Shown here: piece after piece, positions 7,659 to 20,705 of the stretch
Layout: the number at the start of each line of letters is the position of its first letter
Numbering within the stretch: the stretch's first letter is position 1
Assembly: GCF_000143415.4 (NCBI RefSeq)
Contig: NW_003314311.1
Span: 1,186,769 to 1,250,768, forward strand
Reading direction: 5' to 3'
From: Selaginella moellendorffii
Lineage: Eukaryota; Plantae; Lycopodiophyta
Length of the DNA stretch: 64,000 nucleotides
Made by a program: the position numbers and the translations under genes
Notes under the pieces: model-generated
Database searches by the model: none
What the model was told of the DNA's origin: nothing
Seen by the model: only the letters and a program-made list of their open reading frames with translations

Positions 7659-10600
7659 CCCAAGTACTAATGAATGCTAGAGACGAAACTTTGATTTATA
7701 GAAATATATTACTCTATTGATTTTCAAGATTTATTACAAAGTTTACCAAAGCTAGTCTTTATTATTATTCTCATACTCCGTGACAAGCTTATAAGCATGT
7801 GTAAGATTCCTAAAAGGTTCCCAAGTTGATTCACAAGTCGGGTAACCTTTCCACTTTACTAGATATTCCTTTGAATGACAACCACGAGCTTTGCAGGACA
7901 AGAGAATCACCTTGACCTTATACCCAAGGTCACCATGCACAACTTCTAGTGGGGGATGAATGTCTATAGAGCGATCTACATCAACACGATATGGTGCCAA
8001 TAAACTGATATGAAACACATCGTGTACATGGGACAACTCATCCGGAAGATCCAACTTGTAGGATACATCACTAACTCGCGCCAATACCCGATAGGGTCTA
8101 ACATATCTCGGTAACAGCTTCCGAGACAAAGATCCCTTAATGTTTAAGTTCTAGGAAAATAGCCACACCTAATCTCCCACTTGATAGAATACATCCTGAT
8201 GATGCTGATCCTTATCACGTCGATACCTATCCTGAGCTTTGCCCACACCTCAATAGCTCTAGACCAACCTTGGTGTAGTTGCTCTGCATAAGTCTCAATG
8301 GCTAGGACCAACACTTCGGACATTGGTTTCCATACAGTAATCTATTGAGGCACCCCACAAGCATTTCCTTGCAGCATCTTCCATGGAGAATAGCCAATAG
8401 TACTGTGAAATGTGTTGTTATAACAGATTTCTACTATGTTTAAATGCTCAACCCAATTGCGTTGGTCTGCCGCGACATAGTACCGCAAATAATCCTCAAC
8501 TTGAGCATTCACATGTTCTGTTTGCCCACTAGTTTGAGGATGATAAGCCGTACTAAACTTCAATTTGGTACCAAACAGCTGGAACAATATGCCCCAAAAC
8601 TTCCCTATAAACCTCGAATCTCTATCTGAGATCATCTATTCAAGAAGTCCACAAACCTGCACTACTTCATGGAAAAAGAGTTTTGCTACTTGTTTTGCAT
8701 TCATTATTCTCACCGTTGGAATGAAGTGTGCAATCTTCGACAACCAATCCACAACCACCATCAAAGTATCATAACCCTTAGACTTTAGTAAGCAAGTGAT
8801 GAAATCAAGTGTCACACTCTGAAATGGCCATGCCGGTGTTGAAATGCACTACAACTTTTCAACTTGCTTCTCAGTTCTGCTTACATTGCTGGCATATAGG
8901 GCAGGAATGGACATAGTCCGCTATATCACCTTCCATACTAGACCAGAAAAATCCCTTTTTCAATGAAGCCAGAGTCTTTCACTTTCCACCATGTCCCATT
9001 GCCAAAACATCATGATTTTCCTGCAGAAACAACTACTACAAATCCTTAGAGGGAAGATACAACCTTTTTTGTTTATAAAATATAAGCCCATCCTGAACTG
9101 AGAAGTGAAGTTTCGCATTGGTTTTATTAACAACTTTTGCCGCTTCACTACCAAAGTTCTACTTTGACAACTCCGCAAGGTGCAAGATTGTCTTCGCCAA
9201 CAAATCACTTCCATACGAAACCTAAACATCCTCCAACCAGTCCAAACTGATTGCCGATATTGCCTAGAATTGAGCTTGACGACTCAATGCATCCGGAACA
9301 ATATTGACTTTACCAGATTTATATATGATTTCAATATCATATCTAGCAAGCTTCTCTTGCCAACGAGCCTACTTTGGCATAAGCTTAGGCTATGTAATAA
9401 AGTAGCTCAGTGTGTTACTATCTGTATAAACCTTACCCAAATAGTGTCTCCAGTATTCCAAGGCTGACACTATAGCAAACATCTCTTTCTCATGCATTGG
9501 CCATCTTCATTGAGTTTCATCTAATTTCTTGGAATAGAATGCAATGGGACAACCATGTTGCCTTAGTGTAACACCAATCGCTTTGTTACAATCTTTCTAT
9601 AACACAGCACCAATAGCATAGCCAGATGCATCACAATGCACTTCAAAGTGTTTATCAAGATCTGGGATCATGAGAATAAAAACTGTAGTCAAGATCTCCT
9701 TCAATCGTACAAAAGCATGTTGACAATCTGGTGCCAATGAAATGGTATATTGCTCTTCATTAACTCAATCGATGAAAGAGGAATTTTTGCAAAATTGCGG
9801 ACAAACTTGCGATAGTATCCCGCTAAACCGAGAAAGGAACGAACATTTGATACAGTGGTTGGGACTTCCCAGGACTTCAGCGCTTCCACCTTCTTTGGAT
9901 CCACCTCAATTACGCCACTACCAACTATATGTCTAAGAAAGTTTATGCGCAACTAACATATTTACTTTTCTTAGCATATAGTTTGTGTTCACGCAATTTC
10001 TGAAACACCAACTCCAAGTGTTTCAAATGATCGTCCAATGTTTCACTAAAGACTAAAACATCGTCAATATATAGGATAATAAATGTGTCCAAATAATCTT
10101 TGAATATTCTATCCATTATAGTGCTGAATGTCATTGGAGCATTGCATAACCCAAATGGCATGACAAGGAACTCATAAAATTTGTACCGTGTCTTAAAAGT
10201 TGTTTTCTCTACATCCTGATCTACCACCCGTATCTGATGATACCCGAACCGCAAATCAAGTCGCGTAAAATACTTAACCTTTAAGAGTTGGTCAAACAAG
10301 TCATCAATGCAAGGTAAAAGATAACTGTTTTTGACCGTGATTTTGTTGAGTGCCCAATAATCAATACAAATCCTCATGGGTCCATCCTTTTTCATAACAA
10401 AAAGTACTGGCGCTCCATAAGGTGACTTGCTTAGTTAGATATGACCTTTATCAAGAAGCTCCGTAAGTTGCTTCTTGAATTCAGCCATCTCCTTGATGTT
10501 TAAACAATACGAAGCTTTTGTAGGTGGTTTAGAACCCAGAATAACCTCAATCCGATTATCAACCTCACGGCTAGAGATAGCTCTGGCAGCAAATCCTTTG

Positions 10601-12940
10601 GGAAGATATCCTGATTCTTCGCCAACAACTCCAATATCTTCTTTGGTACAGGATCAACTCCTTCATCAATTCGAACTGAGTCATCAACATCCTCAATTTC
10701 CATCACTTGAACCCAAAAGGTCTGACATCCCTTCTTAGCTAATTTTTGAGCGGCTCTTGCAATCAAGAACTTAGCATCCCAATCCTTTGAGGAGTGCTTT
10801 TGCAACTAGAAGGACACATCAAGATGGCCTTTTGAGTTCAATGTGATACGACTTTGTCCAACATTATAAATCCCTTTAATATATTTGTTGAAGAAGTCCA
10901 TACCAAACACCATCTGAAAATCTAGTATCTCCAACACTACCAAGGTCACTCTTTCTTTCCACTTAGATATTTTTATTGGAACATCACTTACAAACTTTTT
11001 GGCTACTTGCCCACCTTCCATAAACCAGAAGTGCATAGGCAACATTTGCTCAACATTTAATCCTAACAACTTAACTAAGTCTTCGGATATCACACTGTGC
11101 GTAGCTCCTATGTCAATCATCACTTGGATTCAGTGTCTATGAACAAAGCCTACCAAATACATCAACAGATCAGTGTTTGCATTGACTGCAAGAAAAACTT
11201 GAGGAAAGAAACAAAAGTAACTCACCTCCTATTCCTCATAGTTTGCATTGACCAACTCATCAACCCCTTTAGCTTCACCACCACCATCTTCCCTCATGAC
11301 ACTAACACGAGACCTTGTCTTATGCTTGTTGGGACATTCCGAGGACCTATGTCCTGACTCTCCACAATGGAAGTAATGATCCACACTACCCGTTCCATTA
11401 GGAGTAGATTTCATAGGTTGCTGCTGTTTGTACCCACCAAGAAGAGGAACAAAAAGCCTAGAACTAGAAGAAGTTGCTAGTGGTCTTCAAGCACCACCTT
11501 TGTTAACCGTTGCTTGTGAGCTTTTAGGGCGAAACCTTCCTTCCACCCTCTGTTTCCAGTCATCTTGTTTATTCCTAGAATTCTTATTCTTGTCTGAGGT
11601 ACCAGTATATAGCTGCTGATATTGTTCCATGAGCGAGTGACTGAAGGCAACTTACTGCACTACCTCCTTACATTCCATGTACGTCTTCAGCTTAAACTTC
11701 AAAATCTCATTGCGAGAAAGTAAACTTAAACCTTCCAGGAAATAACTTTGAGCATCTTCATCACTCATATTTGCAATTATAATGCGCTTCTGAGCAAACG
11801 CATTAACGTAATGCATGAGGTCCCCTTGCTACTTTAACCGCCGCAACTCCACGCGAAGTCTTAGACCAAGATCATCCGGCAAGTATTCCTTACAGATACA
11901 AGACCGCATCTTAGTTTAACTTCTAGTTTGCCCTTTTTCAGCACACACTTGGCACCACCAAGTTTTGGCATGATCGGTGAGAAATGATTGCATGCACGCA
12001 ACTTTCATATGATCGCTAATGTCTGCCGTTATGGAATAGTTTTCCATATCATAGACCCAATCTTCCAAAACCTAATAGTCCCGCATGCCTTTGAAATTGG
12101 GTAGTTTTGGAGGCTTGAACTTTGAAACTCGTGCAACCGGAGGTGGTTGCAGAATTTCATCGTCCTCAAAATTTAAAGAGGAGTCCGGTTGTTTAAGTTT
12201 AACTAGTTTAACTACCTCAGCTTCGTTCTTCTTTTTTTTGTTCTCCTTCTTCAATTTGTGAACTTTCCTTCACAAATTCTCAATCTCGATTTCCTAAGCC
12301 ATACACTATAATGCTACAGCATTTGGCTCTTCCTTTTCTGATTCGGCCTCATCCTCTTCCGCAGCATCTCTAGCAGGAGTTCACTCCTCTCGATTCACCT
12401 GTCTAAAGGTTTTAGCGTCATCAGCATGATTCCTTTTCACCATCCCACTAGTTGCATGCATGCCTCTATCAGTAACTGAACATGTATACAATGTTCTTAC
12501 CAAATGGTGCAATCTAACTAATCCTATACAAGTCGCTTTAGATCTACCAGAAAAGTCTCTGCATATGCAAATTAAGTCAGAAAATCCGACAAAAGTTGGA
12601 TGAGACAATTCCTTTGATACCAAATGTAGCGCACTTGAATTTATAGCCAAACTCCAAGCCCATTATGCTATGAAATGAGGGTCTAGTACAATCCCACGAG
12701 CACCAGCTCCCCGCATCCAACACTTGCACGCAAAATGGTGTCAGACGGAGTCTGGCATAATTTTGGCATATCGGTGGCCTAACGCGAGGAGGGTACCCCA
12801 CCAACTAGAGCAGCGTGGAATTTGGGCTTAGACCCAAGCCAAATGTAAAACAAGGAGCAATACAGCCTAATGGGAGTCAAACTTATGTTTCAAGTGGTCA
12901 AACATGCATTCCAACCACTATCCCTACTATACATTTGGAG
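7659..12940 (-). mobile_element. Degenerate chromodomain-bearing Ty3/Gypsy element (gag-PR-RT-RH-INT-CHD), truncated LTR 12625-~12940
   Basis: PBS TGGTATCAAAG at 12622-12612; gag with HCGESGHRSSEC knuckle; RT YIDD; integrase ISDRDSRF and STAYHPQT; chromodomain EYLVKWKGYPTCESTWEP (7752-8129). Stops and frameshifts throughout. Confidence 0.92.
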
Positions 12941-15325: not shown

Positions 15326-16602
15326 TTACAGCGCTGCGAGCTCGCCAATGCTAAAGGGGTGAACGTCACTGGAAGTTCCATTCCACCACCTTGCCGCAGC
15401 GATCTTATTGAAGGCCTCGGTCTGGTGGACGCCATCCCAGAAGGCGTATTTGGATCGGTCTGGGCAGATGTTCACTCCATCGTTGCAATTCAGTACTCTA
15501 GAGCCCATCTCGCAGCAAGCCCGCGTCGATTCCTCAAAACCTTTGTGTTGATCAAGAGAGGCCATGAGGATGAGAATTATGACTCATCAATCTTCTTCTT
15601 ACCAAATTGCTGGGGATTGGTGTTGGTGTCCACCATGAGATCGTAGAAATTGGTGAGCACGATATGGATACCTTGGTGGGTGCTCGACATCTCGTCCAGG
15701 GCCGAGCGGAGCATTGTATTGTAGGATGATGCCGCGGCCTGAGCGACTGGAGCGCAGCTCCCATCCCGCTGCACATTGAGGGGAATGCATCCCACGGCGC
15801 TCAACCCAACCACGACGAACTTGCGAGCTCCCATCTCGTAGAGCCTCTGCAATAATCATGATCATCATCGCAAAGTTACCCATGAAGATCAAAACGACAC
15901 TTACATGCATTTGTTCCATGACACCGTCCAAGACGCTTTGCAGGAAATCAGTGCTGAGATTCTTACGCTGCTCAAACTCATTGTTGACGTCGTTGTTTCC
16001 AATGCATATATAGAAGATGGATTGGGAAACAAGGCTGGACGACTCGTTTGATCCAAGCTGCTGTTGGAGCTGAGAGGCCATGGATTGAAAGTCATCAACT
16101 TGTTGGGGAAGTGTCTGGGCACCTTGCTACAGCATTTAGATCAGAAGATTAATTACATCAAAGCTCGAAGATTTAGAAGATTCGAGCTCTAACCGTGTGA
16201 GTGTTGGGAAGAACTCCAGAGCTAGCTGACCCAAAGTTGGCACCTTGTTGGAAGTTCTTTGTGCCATAGTATGCAGGTGGATATGGAAGGCCAAGGTAAG
16301 ATGCTGTGCCATCAAGGAAAAGCCATTGTATATATGTAGATTAGAAAGAAATATTTTTATCTCAACTTACCAATCAAATCAACAACAAGGCAACCATTAC
16401 TAAACCTTCCAGTTGCCTGGTGATTCTCAAAATCAATGCCATAAGGAGGGTGATTCGCCCTTGCTTGAGTGTTGAGGTGTTCATTGTCGCCTGCATCCAC
16501 AAGGGAGTCCCCAAACGCAAACAAAGCTGGGACTGATGCAGTCGCAACCAAATAATCTAGCGACAATGTGGCCAAGATCAAGAAAAATGCCTGGAAATCC
16601 AT
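15326..16602 (-). CDS. GDSL esterase/lipase, 5 exons, signal peptide
   Basis: FGDSLVDAG, PPYGIDF..ATGRFSNG, GANFGSASSG, IGNND and FWDGVH blocks, joined by GT-AG introns. Confidence 0.95.
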
Positions 16603-16796
16603 TTGTATTTCTTGTATTTTATTGCTAGCTTTAATACCCAAATGAGGCGATAAGTATAGAGTCAAAGTGTTATTATTATTGTTATGTTGCCTTAATATAT
16701 CGTTTTCTTGGTTCACATAAACAAAAGTGCGTATCATTATAAAATCGTCCAATTATAGCCATATTTTCCTAAATTCCTGGATTAGGCTCTTGAAGA

Positions 16797-18209
16797 ATGA
16801 AAGCATGGAGGTCTGTAAAGCGCCAAGTCGTTCAAGAACAGATAAGTGAACAAGTTTCAGATCCGCAAGAAACCATGGTAACTGCAAGAAACTATAAATG
16901 ATTAGTTGTCTAATTTTCTTCTTCTCGCAGTGCAAAAGATATCTCTTTTGCGCGCACCACTGCAACGCTGAGGCTGAGAGCTGCGCTTTATTTAATTCAT
17001 GCCCACCTTGCTCACAGCCTTGTGAGAAGCGCTGCTTTCACAGCAGATGCCCAGACGTCTGTAGAGCTCTATGCAAGCGCTGCCTCGAGCCTTGCTCCTG
17101 GAACTGTGAGCATTTCAGCTGCAAGCTTCTCTGCTTCCAGATCTGCGAGAGGCCACGCTGTGACAGCCCGTGCACGAAGCTGCTCGGTTGTGGGCATCCC
17201 TGCATTGGCCTGTGTGGAGAGCCTTGCCCAAGTGCCTGCCGCATTTGCCATTCGGATACTTTCGATGCAATCACACGCATGACTCTGAAGGAGAGCGAGA
17301 GCTCCGACAGATTCATCGAGCTTCTCGACTGCGGCCACATCTTCGAGGTAACGGGGCTTGACCAGTGGATGGATATGGACGCTCACGGTGAGCCAGATTC
17401 TGCCAAAGCAATCGTCCCGAAATCCTGGTAACTCAAGCATCGTTCCTGATTTGACCTGTTTTTGCTTTCTTTCTTGCAGTCCCGCATGCAAGATGCCGGT
17501 CTGGAAGTCCTTTCGCTACGGAAACGTTGTGAAGGGAAAGCTGCATCAGATAGAACTCGTCAAGATGAAAGTCTATGGATACGTAAAAGCAGGGATGGAA
17601 ATGCTAGAGAGGAAACAATACGAGCAAGCACACGGACATTTCAAAGAGGTCATAAAAAACCAGCCGGGGAACTTTGAAGCACACTTCGGATTCGCTCAAG
17701 CACTGTGCGGGATGGAAGAATTCGAGCACGCCGTCCCTCATCTCCGGTTTATAGCAGAGAGTAGCAGCCTGGCCACCGAAGTTCGAAGTTTGCCAGCCAA
17801 ACACCCTGATAATCCGCTCGACTCCAGCAGCTTAAACCCCAGCTTCATCGCCGCTCCAAGCCAGTCTCTCGCGATCCAATCGCTCATCCAGTGGGGATCG
17901 GCGCTGACAAGCCTGAGCGAGTTCTCCGACGCTGCGACTCTGTGTGAGATTGTTCTCAGGCATGACAAGAACAACGCTAGCGCCGAGAGCTTGAAAGAGA
18001 TGGTGCGAAAGAGACTAACTCACCAGGTAATGGAAGCCATGCAGACGGCTGAATCCAATCTCAGAGGCAAATGGTACCAGTGCCCAGAGGGCCATGTCTA
18101 CGCTGTGGGAGATTGCGGTCGACCATATGCGGAGTCGCGGTGCCCTGACTGTGGATCGACCATAGGTGGCCTCCATGACTTAGCTGCAGGGAACAAGCAC
18201 TGGCATTAG
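16797..18209 (+). CDS. ZNFX1 C-terminal-like protein: NFX1-type Zn fingers, RING-like segment, TPRs, C-terminal RZ finger (~435 aa; exons 16797-16877, 16931-17427, 17480-18209)
   Basis: Cys-rich CTKLLGCGHPCIGLCGEPCP; CGHIFEVTGLDQWM...CPACK...RYGNVVK; RZ motif WYQCPEGHVYAVGDCG..AESRCPDCGSTIGGLH. Introns of 53 and 52 nt keep the frame. Confidence 0.85.
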
Positions 18210-18385
18210 TGGACTCATTTTATGATTGCTAGTGATAGTTTGCCTCCCCTTTCTCTCATTATCTCACTATCTCACTGTGTGTTTGGGAATACTTTTCTTT
18301 GTTAAAATATGTTGGTATTTATAGCTGGGTATATTCTTTGTTGGCTTTGCGAATTTAGGGCTTTTTGGCTAGGGTTTTAGAGAGT

Positions 18386-20705
18386 ATGCCCGCGGCAATG
18401 GAGGCGACGCAGGCGATGGACGTCGATGAGGCGCCCTTGGTGCCGCCAGAGAAGCCGCAATCGATCGAGCAGCTCACGCTTGCGTCGCTGCAGCAAGCCG
18501 CGGAGTTCTTCGGCAACGCTCCTCCAGATCCGGTAGGCGCCGAGAGGTGAGATCTCTTTAGTAGCGATGTAGCGAACCAAAGAGCTGATGGCGTCTTTCT
18601 TTGGCAGCCGGAGAATCAGGACTGCTTATAAGGTGTGTGCCCTTTTGAGAATGATTTTGTAAGGAACTTCGTACTCCTTTTGTTCTTCTCATTCTAGCGC
18701 ATGCTTACATTAATTTTTCCTCTTTTTTTTTTTTTTCCCTTGTGCCTTTCAGCAAGCGGAGTATGCTGTGGTGAAAGATCTCCCACAAATCACACAGCAG
18801 CCTCTGAAAAACGCGTACGCATTAACGAATGCTGCTGTGGATGTGAAGCCTGCGGCTTTGCCAGATGCTTCACCCGGTCAGATTGTTCGTGCGGGCCCTG
18901 TCGGTCCTCAGCCTGCTTTTACTCCTTCCGGAACACCAGAAAGGTATGTAGCGACTCACGCTCATATGTTTCCGGTTTTAACAGAGTTTTCCATTGTCTA
19001 GTGGCATAGCGAGATACCAACCGAGTGCGGCTGTAATGCGAAGGCTTCCCAGTAGGTGGCCGAAGCCGGAGTGGCATGCTCCATGGAAGAACTATAGAGT
19101 GAGACTTCACGTTTTTTCACGAGTACTGTGTATTGATCTTATTGCAACTGCACAGGTTATTAGTGCTCACTTGGGATGGGTTCGAGCGATAGCTTTCGAT
19201 CCAGGAAACGAGTGGTTCTGTACGGGATCTGCAGATCGTACAATAAAAGTAAGCTCTTTTTTTTTTTTTTCCCTTTCATTTTTATGCCGCTACTTCATTC
19301 TGACCGTTTTGTTCATTTTTAGATTTGGGATACTGCCTCAGCTACCCTGAAGTTAACGTTAACAGGTCATGTTGAGCAAGTTCGAGGTTTGCATTCTACA
19401 TTTGAAGTTTGGATTTAGTCTTAAATGTTTCTTGTATATGTTTGAAATAGGGCTGGCTGTTAGTCCACGCCATCCTTACATGTTTTCGGCTGGAGACGAC
19501 AAGCAAGTGAAATGTTGGGATCTCGAATACAACAAGGTGAGGAATGCGTCCGTTCTTAATTTAAAACTCATGCATGTCTGGGGCAGGTTATCCGATCCTA
19601 CCATGGGCACTTAAGTGGAGTTTACTGTCTTACGCTTCATCCTACTCTGGATATACTCTTAACAGGAGGAAGGGATTCCGTCTGTCGAGTAAGATTTTAA
19701 CTCATGAAGAGTGTGCCTGTTCTTATGCACACAAACTGCTTTCCAGGTCTGGGATATGCGCACAAAAGCTCAAATCTTTGCTCTATCTGGGCACGACAAC
19801 ACTGTATGCTCGGTGATAACACAAGCCACAGTAAGTTTTCAAACAGGGATTATTTTGTTTTTGTGCGTGACTCATACACTTTGGCAGGATCCACAAGTGG
19901 TGACTGGATCTCACGACTGCACGGTCAAGCTATGGAATCTAGCAGCAGGTAAGTTCTCCTAAATAGTTCAATTTGTAGTTTCACTGATAACGATTGTTCT
20001 GGTGTGCAGGAAAGACACTCTCGACTTTGACATTTCACAAAAAGTCGGTGCGCGCACTCGCCTTGCATCCGCTACAGTATGTTCGATTTTTCTTAAGTAT
20101 GTTTGTTTCACTAACTTGCCTTGCAGGCCCGCGTTTGCATCTGCCTCAGCGGACAATATTAAGAAGTTCAGCTTGCCGAGGGGCGAGTTTGTGCACAACA
20201 TGCTGTAAGTTAATTCCTTTTCTGTTTGATAGCGTCGAAACGTCAAAATTGGACATGGTTTGTGTGTTTTCTCACAGCTCACAGCAAAAGGCTATCGTTA
20301 ACTGCATGGCTTTGAACGAAGAGAACGTGCTTGTAACAGGAGGTAAAACAACGCATCGACCAGTGTAGCTTCGAATCATCTAACGTTTGCGCTGTATCAG
20401 GTGATAACGGAAGCATCTGGTTCTGGGATTGGACTAGCGGCCATAACTTCCAGCAAACTCAAACCATCGTTCAGCCAGGTACGCATTTTGGTGGGGAAGT
20501 GGTCCAGGTTGCGTAACTCTTGCTCATGGCAGGTTCGCTGGATGCCGAAGCGAGTATCTTTGCGGCTTCTTTCGACATCACCGGGACCCGACTTGTAACT
20601 TGCGAAGCTGACAAGACGATAAAAATGTGGAGGCAAGACGAGAACGCCACGCCTCAGACGCATCCGCTCAACTTCAGGCCTCCAAGGGACATTCGAAGGT
20701 TTTAG
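18386..20705 (+). CDS. PRL1: Pleiotropic regulatory locus 1 / Prp46 WD40 spliceosomal NTC protein, multi-exon
   Basis: [73 protein letters not shown]...[11 protein letters not shown]; many short introns. Confidence 0.96.

What the first reader, a model, noticed from the sequence alone, without database searches (positions are those of the whole stretch)
16797..18209. Stand-alone, helicase-less ZNFX1-type NFX1/RING-like/TPR/RZ-finger protein in a plant
Seen: an intact 3-exon frame with NFX1-type fingers, a CGH...CPAC RING-like segment, about three TPRs and a complete RZ finger (C-x3-H, GDC, C-x2-C, IGG.H). Only ~195 bp separates it from the divergent GDSL start, leaving no room for a helicase. 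Established: RZ fingers characterise the immune E3 ligases RNF213 and ZNFX1, and in RNF213 drive non-canonical (LPS) ubiquitylation; I do not know them from angiosperms. Inference: a compact ligase in which TPRs supply substrate recognition in place of the RNA helicase. This is the best candidate here for an undescribed immune or ubiquitin system.
Basis: partly seen in the sequence, partly recalled or inferred. Interest (0 to 1): 0.8.

Follow-up and report, generated by a model that had tools for sequence, protein, structure and literature searches.

The report
Helicase-less copy of plant ZNFX1 ligase module
This spikemoss gene is an old, cut-down copy of the ubiquitin-ligase end of a full-length ZNFX1-like RNA helicase gene lying 129 kb away; selection has kept it readable, but it is almost silent in the RNA data, so it is a truncated family member rather than a new immune system.

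Summary
Window 16797-18209 (+) carries an open three-exon frame of 435 aa with a Cys-rich NFX1-like region, a single-zinc RING-like (Miz-like) domain, a three-repeat TPR domain and a full RZ finger (Pfam PF20173, E 2e-21). A divergent GDSL lipase gene starts 194 bp upstream.

The gene is Selaginella moellendorffii SELMODRAFT_421229 (UniProt D8SEE9), already auto-annotated as an RZ-type domain protein.

It is an inverted 1.3-kb partial duplicate, intron included. Its source is the last ~405 codons of a full-length PB1-CCCH-helicase-NFX1-Miz-TPR-RZ gene (XP_024542551.1), ~129 kb away on the same scaffold. The two share 78% nucleotide and 70% amino-acid identity.

The TPRs do not replace the helicase. 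Full-length streptophyte ZNFX1 homologues have them too.

The copy is cut at both ends. It has lost part of the zinc-finger stalk and a C-terminal tail conserved from plants to humans.

Evolution is not neutral: omega is about 0.4 overall and 0.1 in the Miz-like domain, and the frame has no stops. The RZ finger itself looks unconstrained (omega about 1).

Three RNA-seq runs gave almost no reads.

Most likely it is a weakly expressed, helicase-less E3 module. A decaying relic is not excluded. The scan had already noted the parent gene (s1-410727), not this copy.

The parts
16797..16877 (+). Putative exon 1 (27 aa leader, new start codon)
   Evidence: It splices in frame with a GT donor and has the same start as model EFJ17195.1. 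It has no homology to the parent beyond a weak collinear 16-nt patch at 16876-16891 (7 of 300 shuffles reach its score). No RNA reads support it.
16878..16930 (+). Putative intron 1 (53 nt), absent from the parent gene; contains an alternative in-frame ATG at 16898
   Evidence: It has GT..AG ends. The parent reads through this position as coding sequence. ORF 16898-17431 appears.
16927..18201 (+). Duplicated block: homologous to L001 13339-14607, the 3' part of parent gene XP_024542551.1
   Evidence: blastn gives 77.6% identity over 1297 columns, running through the intron. Homology stops at both ends inside the parent's coding sequence.
16931..17269 (+). Cys-rich NFX1-like zinc-finger region (residues 28-140), the distal part of the ZNFX1 stalk
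   Evidence: It aligns to parent residues 1115 onward and to axolotl ZNFX1-like 1528 onward at E 1e-57. The first finger carries a 5-aa insertion and a Cys-to-Ala change at residue 42. Pfam zf-NF-X1 does not match.
17270..17546 (+). Miz-like single-zinc RING/U-box-type domain (residues 141-215, split by intron 2); zinc ligands C161, H163, C193, C196
   Evidence: The ligands are invariant or nearly so in 62 homologues. Pfam gives sub-threshold Rtf2 RING-finger hits in 22 of 62 members and zf-RING_2 hits in 18 of 62. The region maps onto the human ZNFX1 Miz domain 1566-1632. Omega is 0.10.
17428..17479 (+). Intron 2 (52 nt, phase 2), conserved with the parent's only annotated intron
   Evidence: The parent intron at L001 13822-13873 has the same phase and position. 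The DNA alignment runs across it.
17559..18002 (+). Three-repeat TPR domain with capping helix (residues 220-367)
   Evidence: Pfam TPR_19 scores 27.3 bits. The AlphaFold model has pLDDT 90.2. It matches OM64, Sti1 TPR2B and HOP TPR1 at Z 14-15, rmsd 1.6-1.8 A. Omega is 0.26.
18045..18197 (+). RZ finger (residues 382-432): zinc ligands C394, H398, C414, C417; catalytic pair C405 and H425
   Evidence: Pfam PF20173 scores 75.6 bits and the finger aligns to RNF213. Residues were mapped through orangutan ZNFX1, which carries the human numbering. Omega is 1.10, not different from neutral.
18207..18209 (+). Stop codon two codons past the 3' breakpoint; the conserved post-RZ tail is missing
   Evidence: The parent continues with IDGSDHALY and human-numbered ZNFX1 with MDGAQHAAW. 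The copy ends at GNKHWH.

Best explanation
The gene is an old, inverted, DNA-level partial duplicate of the last ~405 codons of the full-length Selaginella ZNFX1-like gene. That parent has the architecture PB1-CCCH-SF1 helicase-NFX1 fingers-Miz-TPR-RZ and lies about 129 kb away on the same scaffold.

The fragment landed between a GDSL lipase gene and a PRL1-like WD40 gene. It acquired a new start (exon 1, or the ATG at 16898) and a new stop.

It encodes only the counterpart of the human ZNFX1 'bi-catalytic E3' C-terminal fragment: distal zinc fingers, a Miz-like E2-binding domain, a helical linker (a TPR domain in plants) and an RZ finger.

Shown: the origin, the architecture, conservation of every zinc and catalytic residue, purifying selection on the Miz-like and TPR parts, loss of constraint on the RZ part, and near-silence in three RNA-seq runs.

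Inferred: the product works as a helicase-independent ubiquitin ligase or E2-recruiting adaptor, mainly through the Miz-like domain. The TPR would be its protein-binding surface, and expression would be low or confined to particular conditions.
For: Origin:
- Residues 28-433 match parent residues 1115-1518 at 69.7% identity.
- The DNA is 77.6% identical, including the intron.
- Intron position and phase are shared with the parent.
- The copy and the parent form a clade with 100/99 support.
- Record coordinates place the two ~129 kb apart on opposite strands.

ZNFX1 kinship:
- Residues 27-277 align to axolotl ZNFX1-like at E 1e-57.

Selection:
- Pairwise dN/dS is 0.30, with dS 0.60.
- With equal neutral branch lengths for the two paralogues, omega of the copy is 0.39, LRT against 1 = 27.2, p 2e-7.
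- By region under the same model: Miz-like 0.10 (p 4e-7) and TPR 0.26 (p 2e-4).
- All indels in the protein alignment to the parent are whole codons and no stop interrupts the frame.
- In a neutral simulation, none of 5000 runs stayed stop-free at K = 0.3, and 1.4% did at K = 0.1.

Catalytic equipment:
- C394/H398/C414/C417, C405/H425, linchpin position K197, L146 at the F1575 position and V376 at the I1835 position are all present.

Precedent:
- Human ZNFX1 C-terminal fragments without the armadillo and helicase domains are active ligases.
- C. elegans ZNFX-1 lacks the RZ finger but keeps the Miz domain (preprint 10.1101/2025.10.14.682297).

Transcription:
- Three exon-internal contig pieces occur in run X1, which is only guessed to be RNA, and three reads occur in X9.
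Against: - Three deep RNA-seq runs gave zero reads in two and three oddly joined reads in one. The gene 180 bp downstream had depth 20-40.
- The RZ region evolves at omega 1.10, significantly above the parent's 0.09.
- Five RZ substitutions derived in the copy fall at positions that 10-12 of 12 other streptophyte homologues keep.
- The copy lacks a tail conserved from plants to humans.
- Its first finger is damaged.
- It evolves 1.5 to 5.6 times faster than the parent.
- Without the equal-branch assumption, the codon test cannot reject omega = 1.
- No orthologue of the short form was found in another species.
- Exon 1 has no support.
Confidence: 0.6

Rival explanations
1. It is a non-functional relic: a truncated gene fragment that is no longer used and is slowly decaying. 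The open frame would be left over from an earlier selected phase.
For: - It is nearly silent in three RNA-seq runs.
- It is truncated at both ends inside coding sequence, with loss of the conserved tail.
- Omega in the RZ region is about 1.
- Its branch is longer than the parent's.
- Similar short copies next to full-length genes in Riccia sorocarpa and Calypogeia fissa are young (90-95% identity), which fits birth-and-death turnover.
Against: - There are no stops or frameshifts in 400 codons at dS 0.6, and the neutral simulation gives P below 1/5000 at K = 0.3.
- Omega is 0.10 in the Miz-like domain and 0.26 in the TPR domain.
- All zinc and catalytic residues are kept.
- The GDSL gene sharing the 194-bp upstream region is also silent in those runs, so the libraries may simply miss the expressing tissue.
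Confidence: 0.3
2. The fragment was captured and moved by a transposon (Pack-MULE or Helitron type), so it is transposon cargo rather than a host gene.
For: A 1.3-kb intron-containing gene fragment, cut at both ends within coding sequence, was inserted in inverted orientation into a 1.8-kb intergenic gap. A weak 21-nt inverted repeat (76% complementary) flanks it at 16756-16776 and 18351-18371.
Against: - That inverted repeat is at chance level for a 1.9-kb region searched with an 8-nt seed.
- No target-site duplication, terminal repeat family or transposase was seen next to it.
- The nearest transposon ORFs are gypsy-type, about 6 kb away.
- Only one copy of the fragment is in the window.
Confidence: 0.07
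3. The short gene is a mis-annotation: its exons belong to a longer helicase-bearing transcript with upstream exons.
For: Database models disagree on its structure, at 387 aa and 238 aa.
Against: - A divergent GDSL gene starts 194 bp upstream.
- tblastn finds no other ZNFX1-like piece in 64 kb.
- DNA homology to the parent ends at 16927.
Confidence: 0.02

Closest known systems
Selaginella moellendorffii full-length ZNFX1-like gene (XP_024542551.1 / XP_024528675.1; older model SELMODRAFT_408664)
   Same: The two share 70% aa and 78% nt identity over the last ~405 codons. They have the same intron and the same order of fingers, Miz-like, TPR and RZ domains.
   Different: The parent has PB1, CCCH, the ZNFX1/armadillo domain, the SF1 helicase, the proximal zinc fingers and the conserved post-RZ tail. 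The copy has none of these.
Human ZNFX1 C-terminal 'bi-catalytic E3' fragment (Miz-like domain 1566-1632 plus RZ finger, catalytic C1860/H1881)
   Same: It is homologous across the fingers, Miz and RZ regions. Every zinc ligand and the Cys/His pair are conserved, and the linchpin position carries a basic residue. The human fragment is active without the helicase.
   Different: The human linker is described as a helical bundle, not a TPR domain. In humans the module is never a separate gene. The copy has Leu at the F1575 position and lacks the tail.
RNF213 RZ finger
   Same: They share the RZ motif and align at E 4e-8.
   Different: RNF213 is a giant dynein-like AAA protein. Nothing outside the ~40-residue finger is shared.
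CHIP/STUB1 (TPR plus U-box E3)
   Same: Both combine a three-repeat TPR domain with a RING/U-box-type E2-binding domain in a small protein. The TPR fold resembles chaperone-binding TPRs.
   Different: Domain order is reversed. On inspection of the alignment, the Asn/Lys carboxylate-clamp positions are not kept in the plant ZNFX1 TPRs (by eye). There is no sequence kinship beyond the TPR fold.
C. elegans ZNFX-1
   Same: It shows that a ZNFX1 family member can do without a working RZ finger while keeping the Miz domain.
   Different: It keeps the helicase and lacks the RZ finger, which is the opposite truncation.

Membership tests
[quoted passage not shown] | SF1 RNA helicase core (Pfam AAA_11 / AAA_12) | tested here: not met
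   The gene has no such Pfam hit and the 64-kb window holds no other ZNFX1-like piece. A GDSL gene starts 194 bp upstream. The parent and other full-length homologues have the helicase.
[quoted passage not shown] | N-terminal ZNFX1/armadillo domain (PF25396) | tested here: not met
   It is absent from the copy and present in the parent.
[quoted passage not shown] | Cys-rich NFX1-type finger stalk homologous to that of ZNFX1 | tested here: met
   The region aligns at E 1e-57 to axolotl ZNFX1-like and similarly to lamprey, mollusc and amphioxus proteins. Only the distal part is present, and the first finger is damaged. Pfam zf-NF-X1 gives no hit.
[quoted passage not shown] | Miz-like single-zinc RING/U-box hybrid (C-x-H ... 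C-x2-C) with a linchpin position after the last Cys | tested here: met
   C161, H163, C193 and C196 are conserved. K197 sits at the Q1623 position. Pfam gives sub-threshold Rtf2-RING and zf-RING_2 hits. The fold of this part was modelled at high confidence but not searched on its own.
RZ finger (Pfam PF20173; RNF213/ZNFX1) | Profile match above the curated cut-off | tested here: met
   It scores 75.6 bits against a cut-off of 27.
RZ finger (Pfam PF20173; RNF213/ZNFX1) | Zinc ligands (human C1849, H1853, C1869, C1872) and the catalytic Cys/His pair (C1860, H1881) | tested here: met
   These map to C394, H398, C414, C417, C405 and H425. The loop before the His is one residue shorter.
RZ finger (Pfam PF20173; RNF213/ZNFX1) | Ubiquitin-binding helix before the finger (human I1835) | tested here: inconclusive
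   V376 aligns with I1835, as it does in the parent. Binding itself was not tested.
RZ finger (Pfam PF20173; RNF213/ZNFX1) | E3 activity, i.e. ubiquitin transfer through the RZ cysteine | not testable with these tools
   This needs in vitro ubiquitylation. Omega of about 1 in this region and the missing conserved tail raise doubt.
TPR domain | Three or more helix-turn-helix repeats with the TPR fold | tested here: met
   TPR_19 scores 27.3 bits against a cut-off of 25. The model matches OM64, Sti1 and HOP TPR domains at Z 14-15, rmsd 1.6-1.8 A over 112-116 residues.
CHIP-like chaperone-dependent E3 (considered, not adopted) | EEVD-binding carboxylate clamp in the TPR | tested here: inconclusive
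   The clamp Asn/Lys positions are not conserved among plant ZNFX1 TPRs on inspection of the alignment. No formal test was run.

The most novel reading that the evidence does not exclude
The short gene is a selected, free-standing ZNFX1 E3 module. It would work either as an independent Miz-type ligase or as a trans-acting partner, regulator or decoy of the full-length RNA-sensing ZNFX1-like protein.

Human ZNFX1 ubiquitylates in trans between protomers. Such helicase-less modules arise repeatedly in non-seed plants (Selaginella, Riccia, Calypogeia).

Together this would make a two-component version of an RNA helicase-E3 defence protein in a plant lineage where ZNFX1 has never been studied.
Probability: 0.2. 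Interest if true: 0.6.

Novelty: new variant of a known kind. Interest (0 to 1): 0.38.

Why it matters
ZNFX1 is an RNA-sensing helicase and ubiquitin ligase needed for human antiviral and antibacterial immunity. Its ligase end was dissected only recently.

This locus leads to two points.

First, streptophytes other than flowering plants keep full-length ZNFX1 homologues. Those examined or listed with Pfam domains, from liverworts to gymnosperms, carry a TPR domain between the Miz-like and RZ ligase domains. My three full-text searches found no paper on plant ZNFX1.

Second, the ligase end has been copied away from the helicase more than once. In Selaginella, one such copy has stayed open under selection for a long time.

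If the copy is active, it is a natural 'C-terminal fragment' experiment. It would show what the Miz-TPR-RZ module does without RNA sensing.

If it is inert, it is an ordinary truncated paralogue.

Either way, the more interesting object for plant immunity research is the full-length parent gene, not this copy.

Tried and rejected
- Word-index search with exon 3 (156-495 aa window) found only the window's own protein. No short orthologue turned up, but this says little.
- Single-sequence AlphaFold of exon 3 gave a useless model, pLDDT 41. The alignment-based model replaced it.
- Short 'proteins' of 300-430 aa among the hits looked like stand-alone homologues. They are prokaryote-style ORF calls on last exons in metagenome contigs, or a frameshifted transcript fragment (P0164), so they are not evidence.
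- P0199 (1778 aa, C-terminus 69% identical to the parent) was suspected to be a full-length relative closer to the copy. It is an older model of the parent's allele, only 51% identical to the copy.
- The three-taxon codon model with free branch lengths is not identifiable because the outgroup is saturated. It was refitted with equal neutral lengths for the two paralogues.
- Fold searches returned only TPR matches, so the Miz-like fold was not independently matched to U-box or SP-RING structures.
- PDB sequence search with exon 2 returned nothing, and NCBIfam added nothing.
- Literature searches found no paper on plant ZNFX1 or plant RZ fingers and none naming run SRR9647849.

Full report
**What is there.**
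Splicing 16797-16877, 16931-17427 and 17480-18209 with GT..AG introns gives a 1308-nt open frame of 435 aa.

Pfam places a full RZ-type zinc finger at the C-terminus (75.6 bits against a cut-off of 27, E 2.3e-21). TPR_19 is just above its cut-off in the middle. Nothing matches the Cys-rich exon 2.

The RZ finger aligns to the RNF213 RZ finger in the PDB at E 4e-8. Exon 2 finds nothing there.

A GDSL lipase gene on the minus strand starts at 16602, 194 bp from the ATG. A PRL1-like WD40 gene starts 177 bp after the stop.

**Identity of the locus.**
The genome is Selaginella moellendorffii (earlier scan note).

The gene is already in the databases as EFJ17195.1, SELMODRAFT_421229, UniProt D8SEE9, 'RZ-type domain-containing protein'. 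That model is 387 aa, and a second entry has 238 aa.

It uses a wrong frame over the first fingers and skips 14 residues before the RZ finger. The 435-aa model used here is collinear with homologues throughout.

**Where it came from.**
An exhaustive profile search gave a 1343-aa Selaginella protein as the best non-self hit, 70% identical over exon 3. Below it came 1700-1990-aa proteins of liverworts and other plants. These carry the SF1 helicase domains plus TPR and RZ, and some also PB1 and CCCH.

The closest relative is XP_024542551.1 (1540 aa) on the same scaffold, GL377615.1. XP_024528675.1 is its allele on another scaffold.

- Residues 28-433 of the window protein align to residues 1115-1518 of the parent at 69.7% identity.
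- At the DNA level, window 16927-18201 aligns to the parent at 77.6%, straight through intron 2.
- The parent's only annotated intron has the same position and phase.
- Homology stops at both ends inside the parent's coding sequence.
  - At the 5' end it stops within the zinc-finger stalk. Only a weak collinear 16-nt patch lies further upstream.
  - At the 3' end it stops about 66 nt before the parent's stop.
- Record coordinates put the parent at 1,069,884-1,074,558 (minus) and the copy at 1,203,565-1,204,977 (plus). They are about 129 kb apart and inverted.
- A maximum-likelihood tree joins the copy with the parent and its allele at 100/99 support.

The gene is therefore a DNA-level, doubly truncated partial duplicate and not a retrocopy. 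That lead was checked here.

**Relation to animal ZNFX1.**
Residues 27-277 align to axolotl ZNFX1-like 1528-1766 at E 1e-57, and similarly to lamprey, mollusc and amphioxus proteins.

[quoted passage not shown] The RZ zinc ligands are C1849/H1853/C1869/C1872 and the catalytic pair is C1860/H1881.

Orangutan ZNFX1 (1918 aa) carries all of these residues at the human numbers, so it served as a ruler.

| Human ZNFX1 | Role | Window protein |
|---|---|---|
| C1849, H1853, C1869, C1872 | RZ zinc ligands | C394, H398, C414, C417 |
| C1860, H1881 | catalytic pair | C405, H425 |
| Q1623 | linchpin position | K197 |
| F1575 | E2 contact | L146 |
| I1835 | ubiquitin-helix residue | V376 |

The CGH...CPAC segment is the single-zinc site (C161, H163, C193, C196). 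It is invariant or nearly so in 62 homologues. Pfam gives sub-threshold Rtf2-RING and zf-RING_2 hits across the family.

**The TPR domain.**
An AlphaFold model of residues 98-367, built with 61 homologues, has pLDDT 90.2 and pTM 0.77.

Residues 220-367 match three-repeat TPR domains (OM64, Sti1 TPR2B, HOP TPR1) at Z 14-15 and rmsd 1.6-1.8 A.

The same TPR is detected in full-length helicase-bearing homologues of Selaginella, Riccia, Calypogeia, Adiantum, Ceratopteris and Cryptomeria. It belongs to the plant ZNFX1 module and is not a replacement for the helicase.

The Miz-like part was not searched separately, because the TPR matches filled both result lists.

**Distribution.**
Among the best 120 of 435 hits to the parent's C-terminus, the plant entries were Selaginella (three loci), Ginkgo, Cryptomeria, Adiantum, Ceratopteris, Riccia and the charophyte Mesotaenium. 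The rest were animals. No angiosperm was listed, though weaker angiosperm hits are not excluded.

Three literature searches found no paper on plant ZNFX1.

**Selection.**
- Pairwise dN/dS against the parent is 0.30, with dS 0.60 and dN 0.18.
- All indels in the protein alignment to the parent are whole codons and no stop interrupts the frame.
- Neutral simulation of 400 codons gave 0 of 5000 stop-free runs at K = 0.3 and 1.4% at K = 0.1.
- A three-taxon codon likelihood model with free branch lengths is not identifiable, because the outgroup is saturated.
- I then set the two paralogues to equal neutral branch lengths, an assumption that two copies in one genome since the duplication mutate at the same rate. 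The results are below.

| Region | Omega of the copy | Test against omega = 1 |
|---|---|---|
| Whole alignment | 0.39 | LRT 27.2, p 2e-7 |
| Miz-like | 0.10 | p 4e-7 |
| TPR | 0.26 | p 2e-4 |
| Cys-rich | 0.46 | p 0.04 |
| RZ | 1.10 | not significant |

The RZ value is significantly above the parent's 0.09 (p 3e-4).

The copy evolves faster than the parent. Parsimony polarisation gives 57:39 changes, and 14:6 in the RZ region. The tree gives branch lengths of 0.42 against 0.075.

Five RZ substitutions derived in the copy hit positions that 10-12 of 12 other streptophyte homologues keep. Two of these residues (GDCG, CGR) also occur in animal ZNFX1 or RNF213.

The copy also lacks the post-RZ tail, which reads IDGSDHALY in the parent and MDGAQHAAW at the human numbering. 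Its first finger has an insertion and a lost Cys.

**Expression.**
Three raw RNA-seq runs were laid on the stretch, with about 9.2 million records read from each. They gave no reads on the gene in two runs. In the third there were three reads, with an A>G difference and an odd AT..AG joint from 18038 to 18135.

The PRL1-like neighbour had depth 20-40 with clean GT..AG joints. The divergent GDSL gene was also silent.

Contigs of another run, guessed to be RNA, hold three pieces that all lie inside exons 2 and 3.

Transcription is therefore very low or restricted, and the 5' end is unverified.

**How it most likely works.**
By homology, the Miz-like domain should bind a charged E2. It could transfer ubiquitin directly or pass it to C405 of the RZ finger. 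The TPR would be a protein-binding surface.

Human C-terminal fragments without the helicase are active and are stimulated by ubiquitin chains. C. elegans ZNFX-1 works without an RZ finger.

The selection pattern points to the Miz-like and TPR parts as what is being kept. I give about 0.6 to a live, weakly expressed helicase-less module and about 0.3 to a decaying relic.

I found no sign of transposon capture beyond a chance-level inverted repeat.

**Recurrence.**
- Riccia sorocarpa has a 356-aa copy, 90% identical to the end of a 1768-aa gene about 3 kb away and convergent with it.
- Calypogeia fissa has 95%-identical fragments.
- Riccia fluitans has an 820-aa protein in which the Miz-TPR part is followed by more TPRs and a J domain instead of the RZ finger.

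The family thus undergoes frequent partial duplication and domain shuffling.

**Verdict.**
This is a truncated paralogue of a known family with an unusual helicase-less architecture, not a new system. Its interest is moderate. The parent gene and the plant ZNFX1 family as a whole are the better target.

Noticed in passing
L001:10001-14675 (GL377615.1 1,069,884-1,074,558, about 129 kb from the finding): This is the full-length Selaginella ZNFX1-like gene. The older model of its allele (SELMODRAFT_408664, 1778 aa) adds PB1 and CCCH domains ahead of the helicase. Two further full-length paralogues exist (SELMODRAFT_438270, 1912 aa; SELMODRAFT_315, partial). No paper on plant ZNFX1 was found.
   Followed up: partly
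L005:10001-11300 and L005:14418-20936 (Riccia sorocarpa CM100796.1): A 356-aa Miz-TPR-RZ gene lies about 3 kb from a 1768-aa full-length ZNFX1-like gene, convergent with it and 90% identical to its end. This is an independent, younger helicase-less partial duplicate.
   Followed up: partly
P0016 (Riccia fluitans KAL2628683.1, 820 aa): This protein joins the helicase end, NFX1 fingers, Miz-like domain and TPR to extra TPRs and a C-terminal J domain, in place of the RZ finger. It is 64% identical to the full-length Riccia fluitans ZNFX1-like gene, so it is a domain-swapped derivative.
   Followed up: no
window 18322-19500: The PRL1-like WD40 gene is well expressed, with five confirmed short introns (57-74 nt). 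It shows six sites where about a quarter to 60% of reads differ from the assembly (18446, 18482, 18917, 19194, 19355, 19367). These are most simply allelic differences between haplotypes or strains.
   Followed up: no
window 18013-18170: Three reads of one RNA run join 18038 to 18135 (AT..AG, 96 nt skipped, in frame) and carry A>G at 18030. There is another loose end at 18013. They may come from the other allele, a paralogue or aberrant splicing, and the skip would delete most of the RZ finger.
   Followed up: no
window 9943-11123 (minus strand): ORFs here have reverse-transcriptase and aspartic-protease-like sequence of an LTR retrotransposon. They lie about 6 kb upstream of the finding.
   Followed up: no
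window 15326-16602 (minus strand): The GDSL lipase gene is divergent from the finding across a 194-bp gap. It had no reads in the three RNA-seq runs, so the shared upstream region may be inactive in those samples.
   Followed up: no
L002:1-1420 (Logan contig of SRR9647849): This transcript fragment of a ZNFX1-like gene has a frameshift in the finger region and a degenerate RZ finger (IGG motif lost). The ORF caller reports it as a 433-aa 'protein', which mimics a stand-alone homologue.
   Followed up: partly
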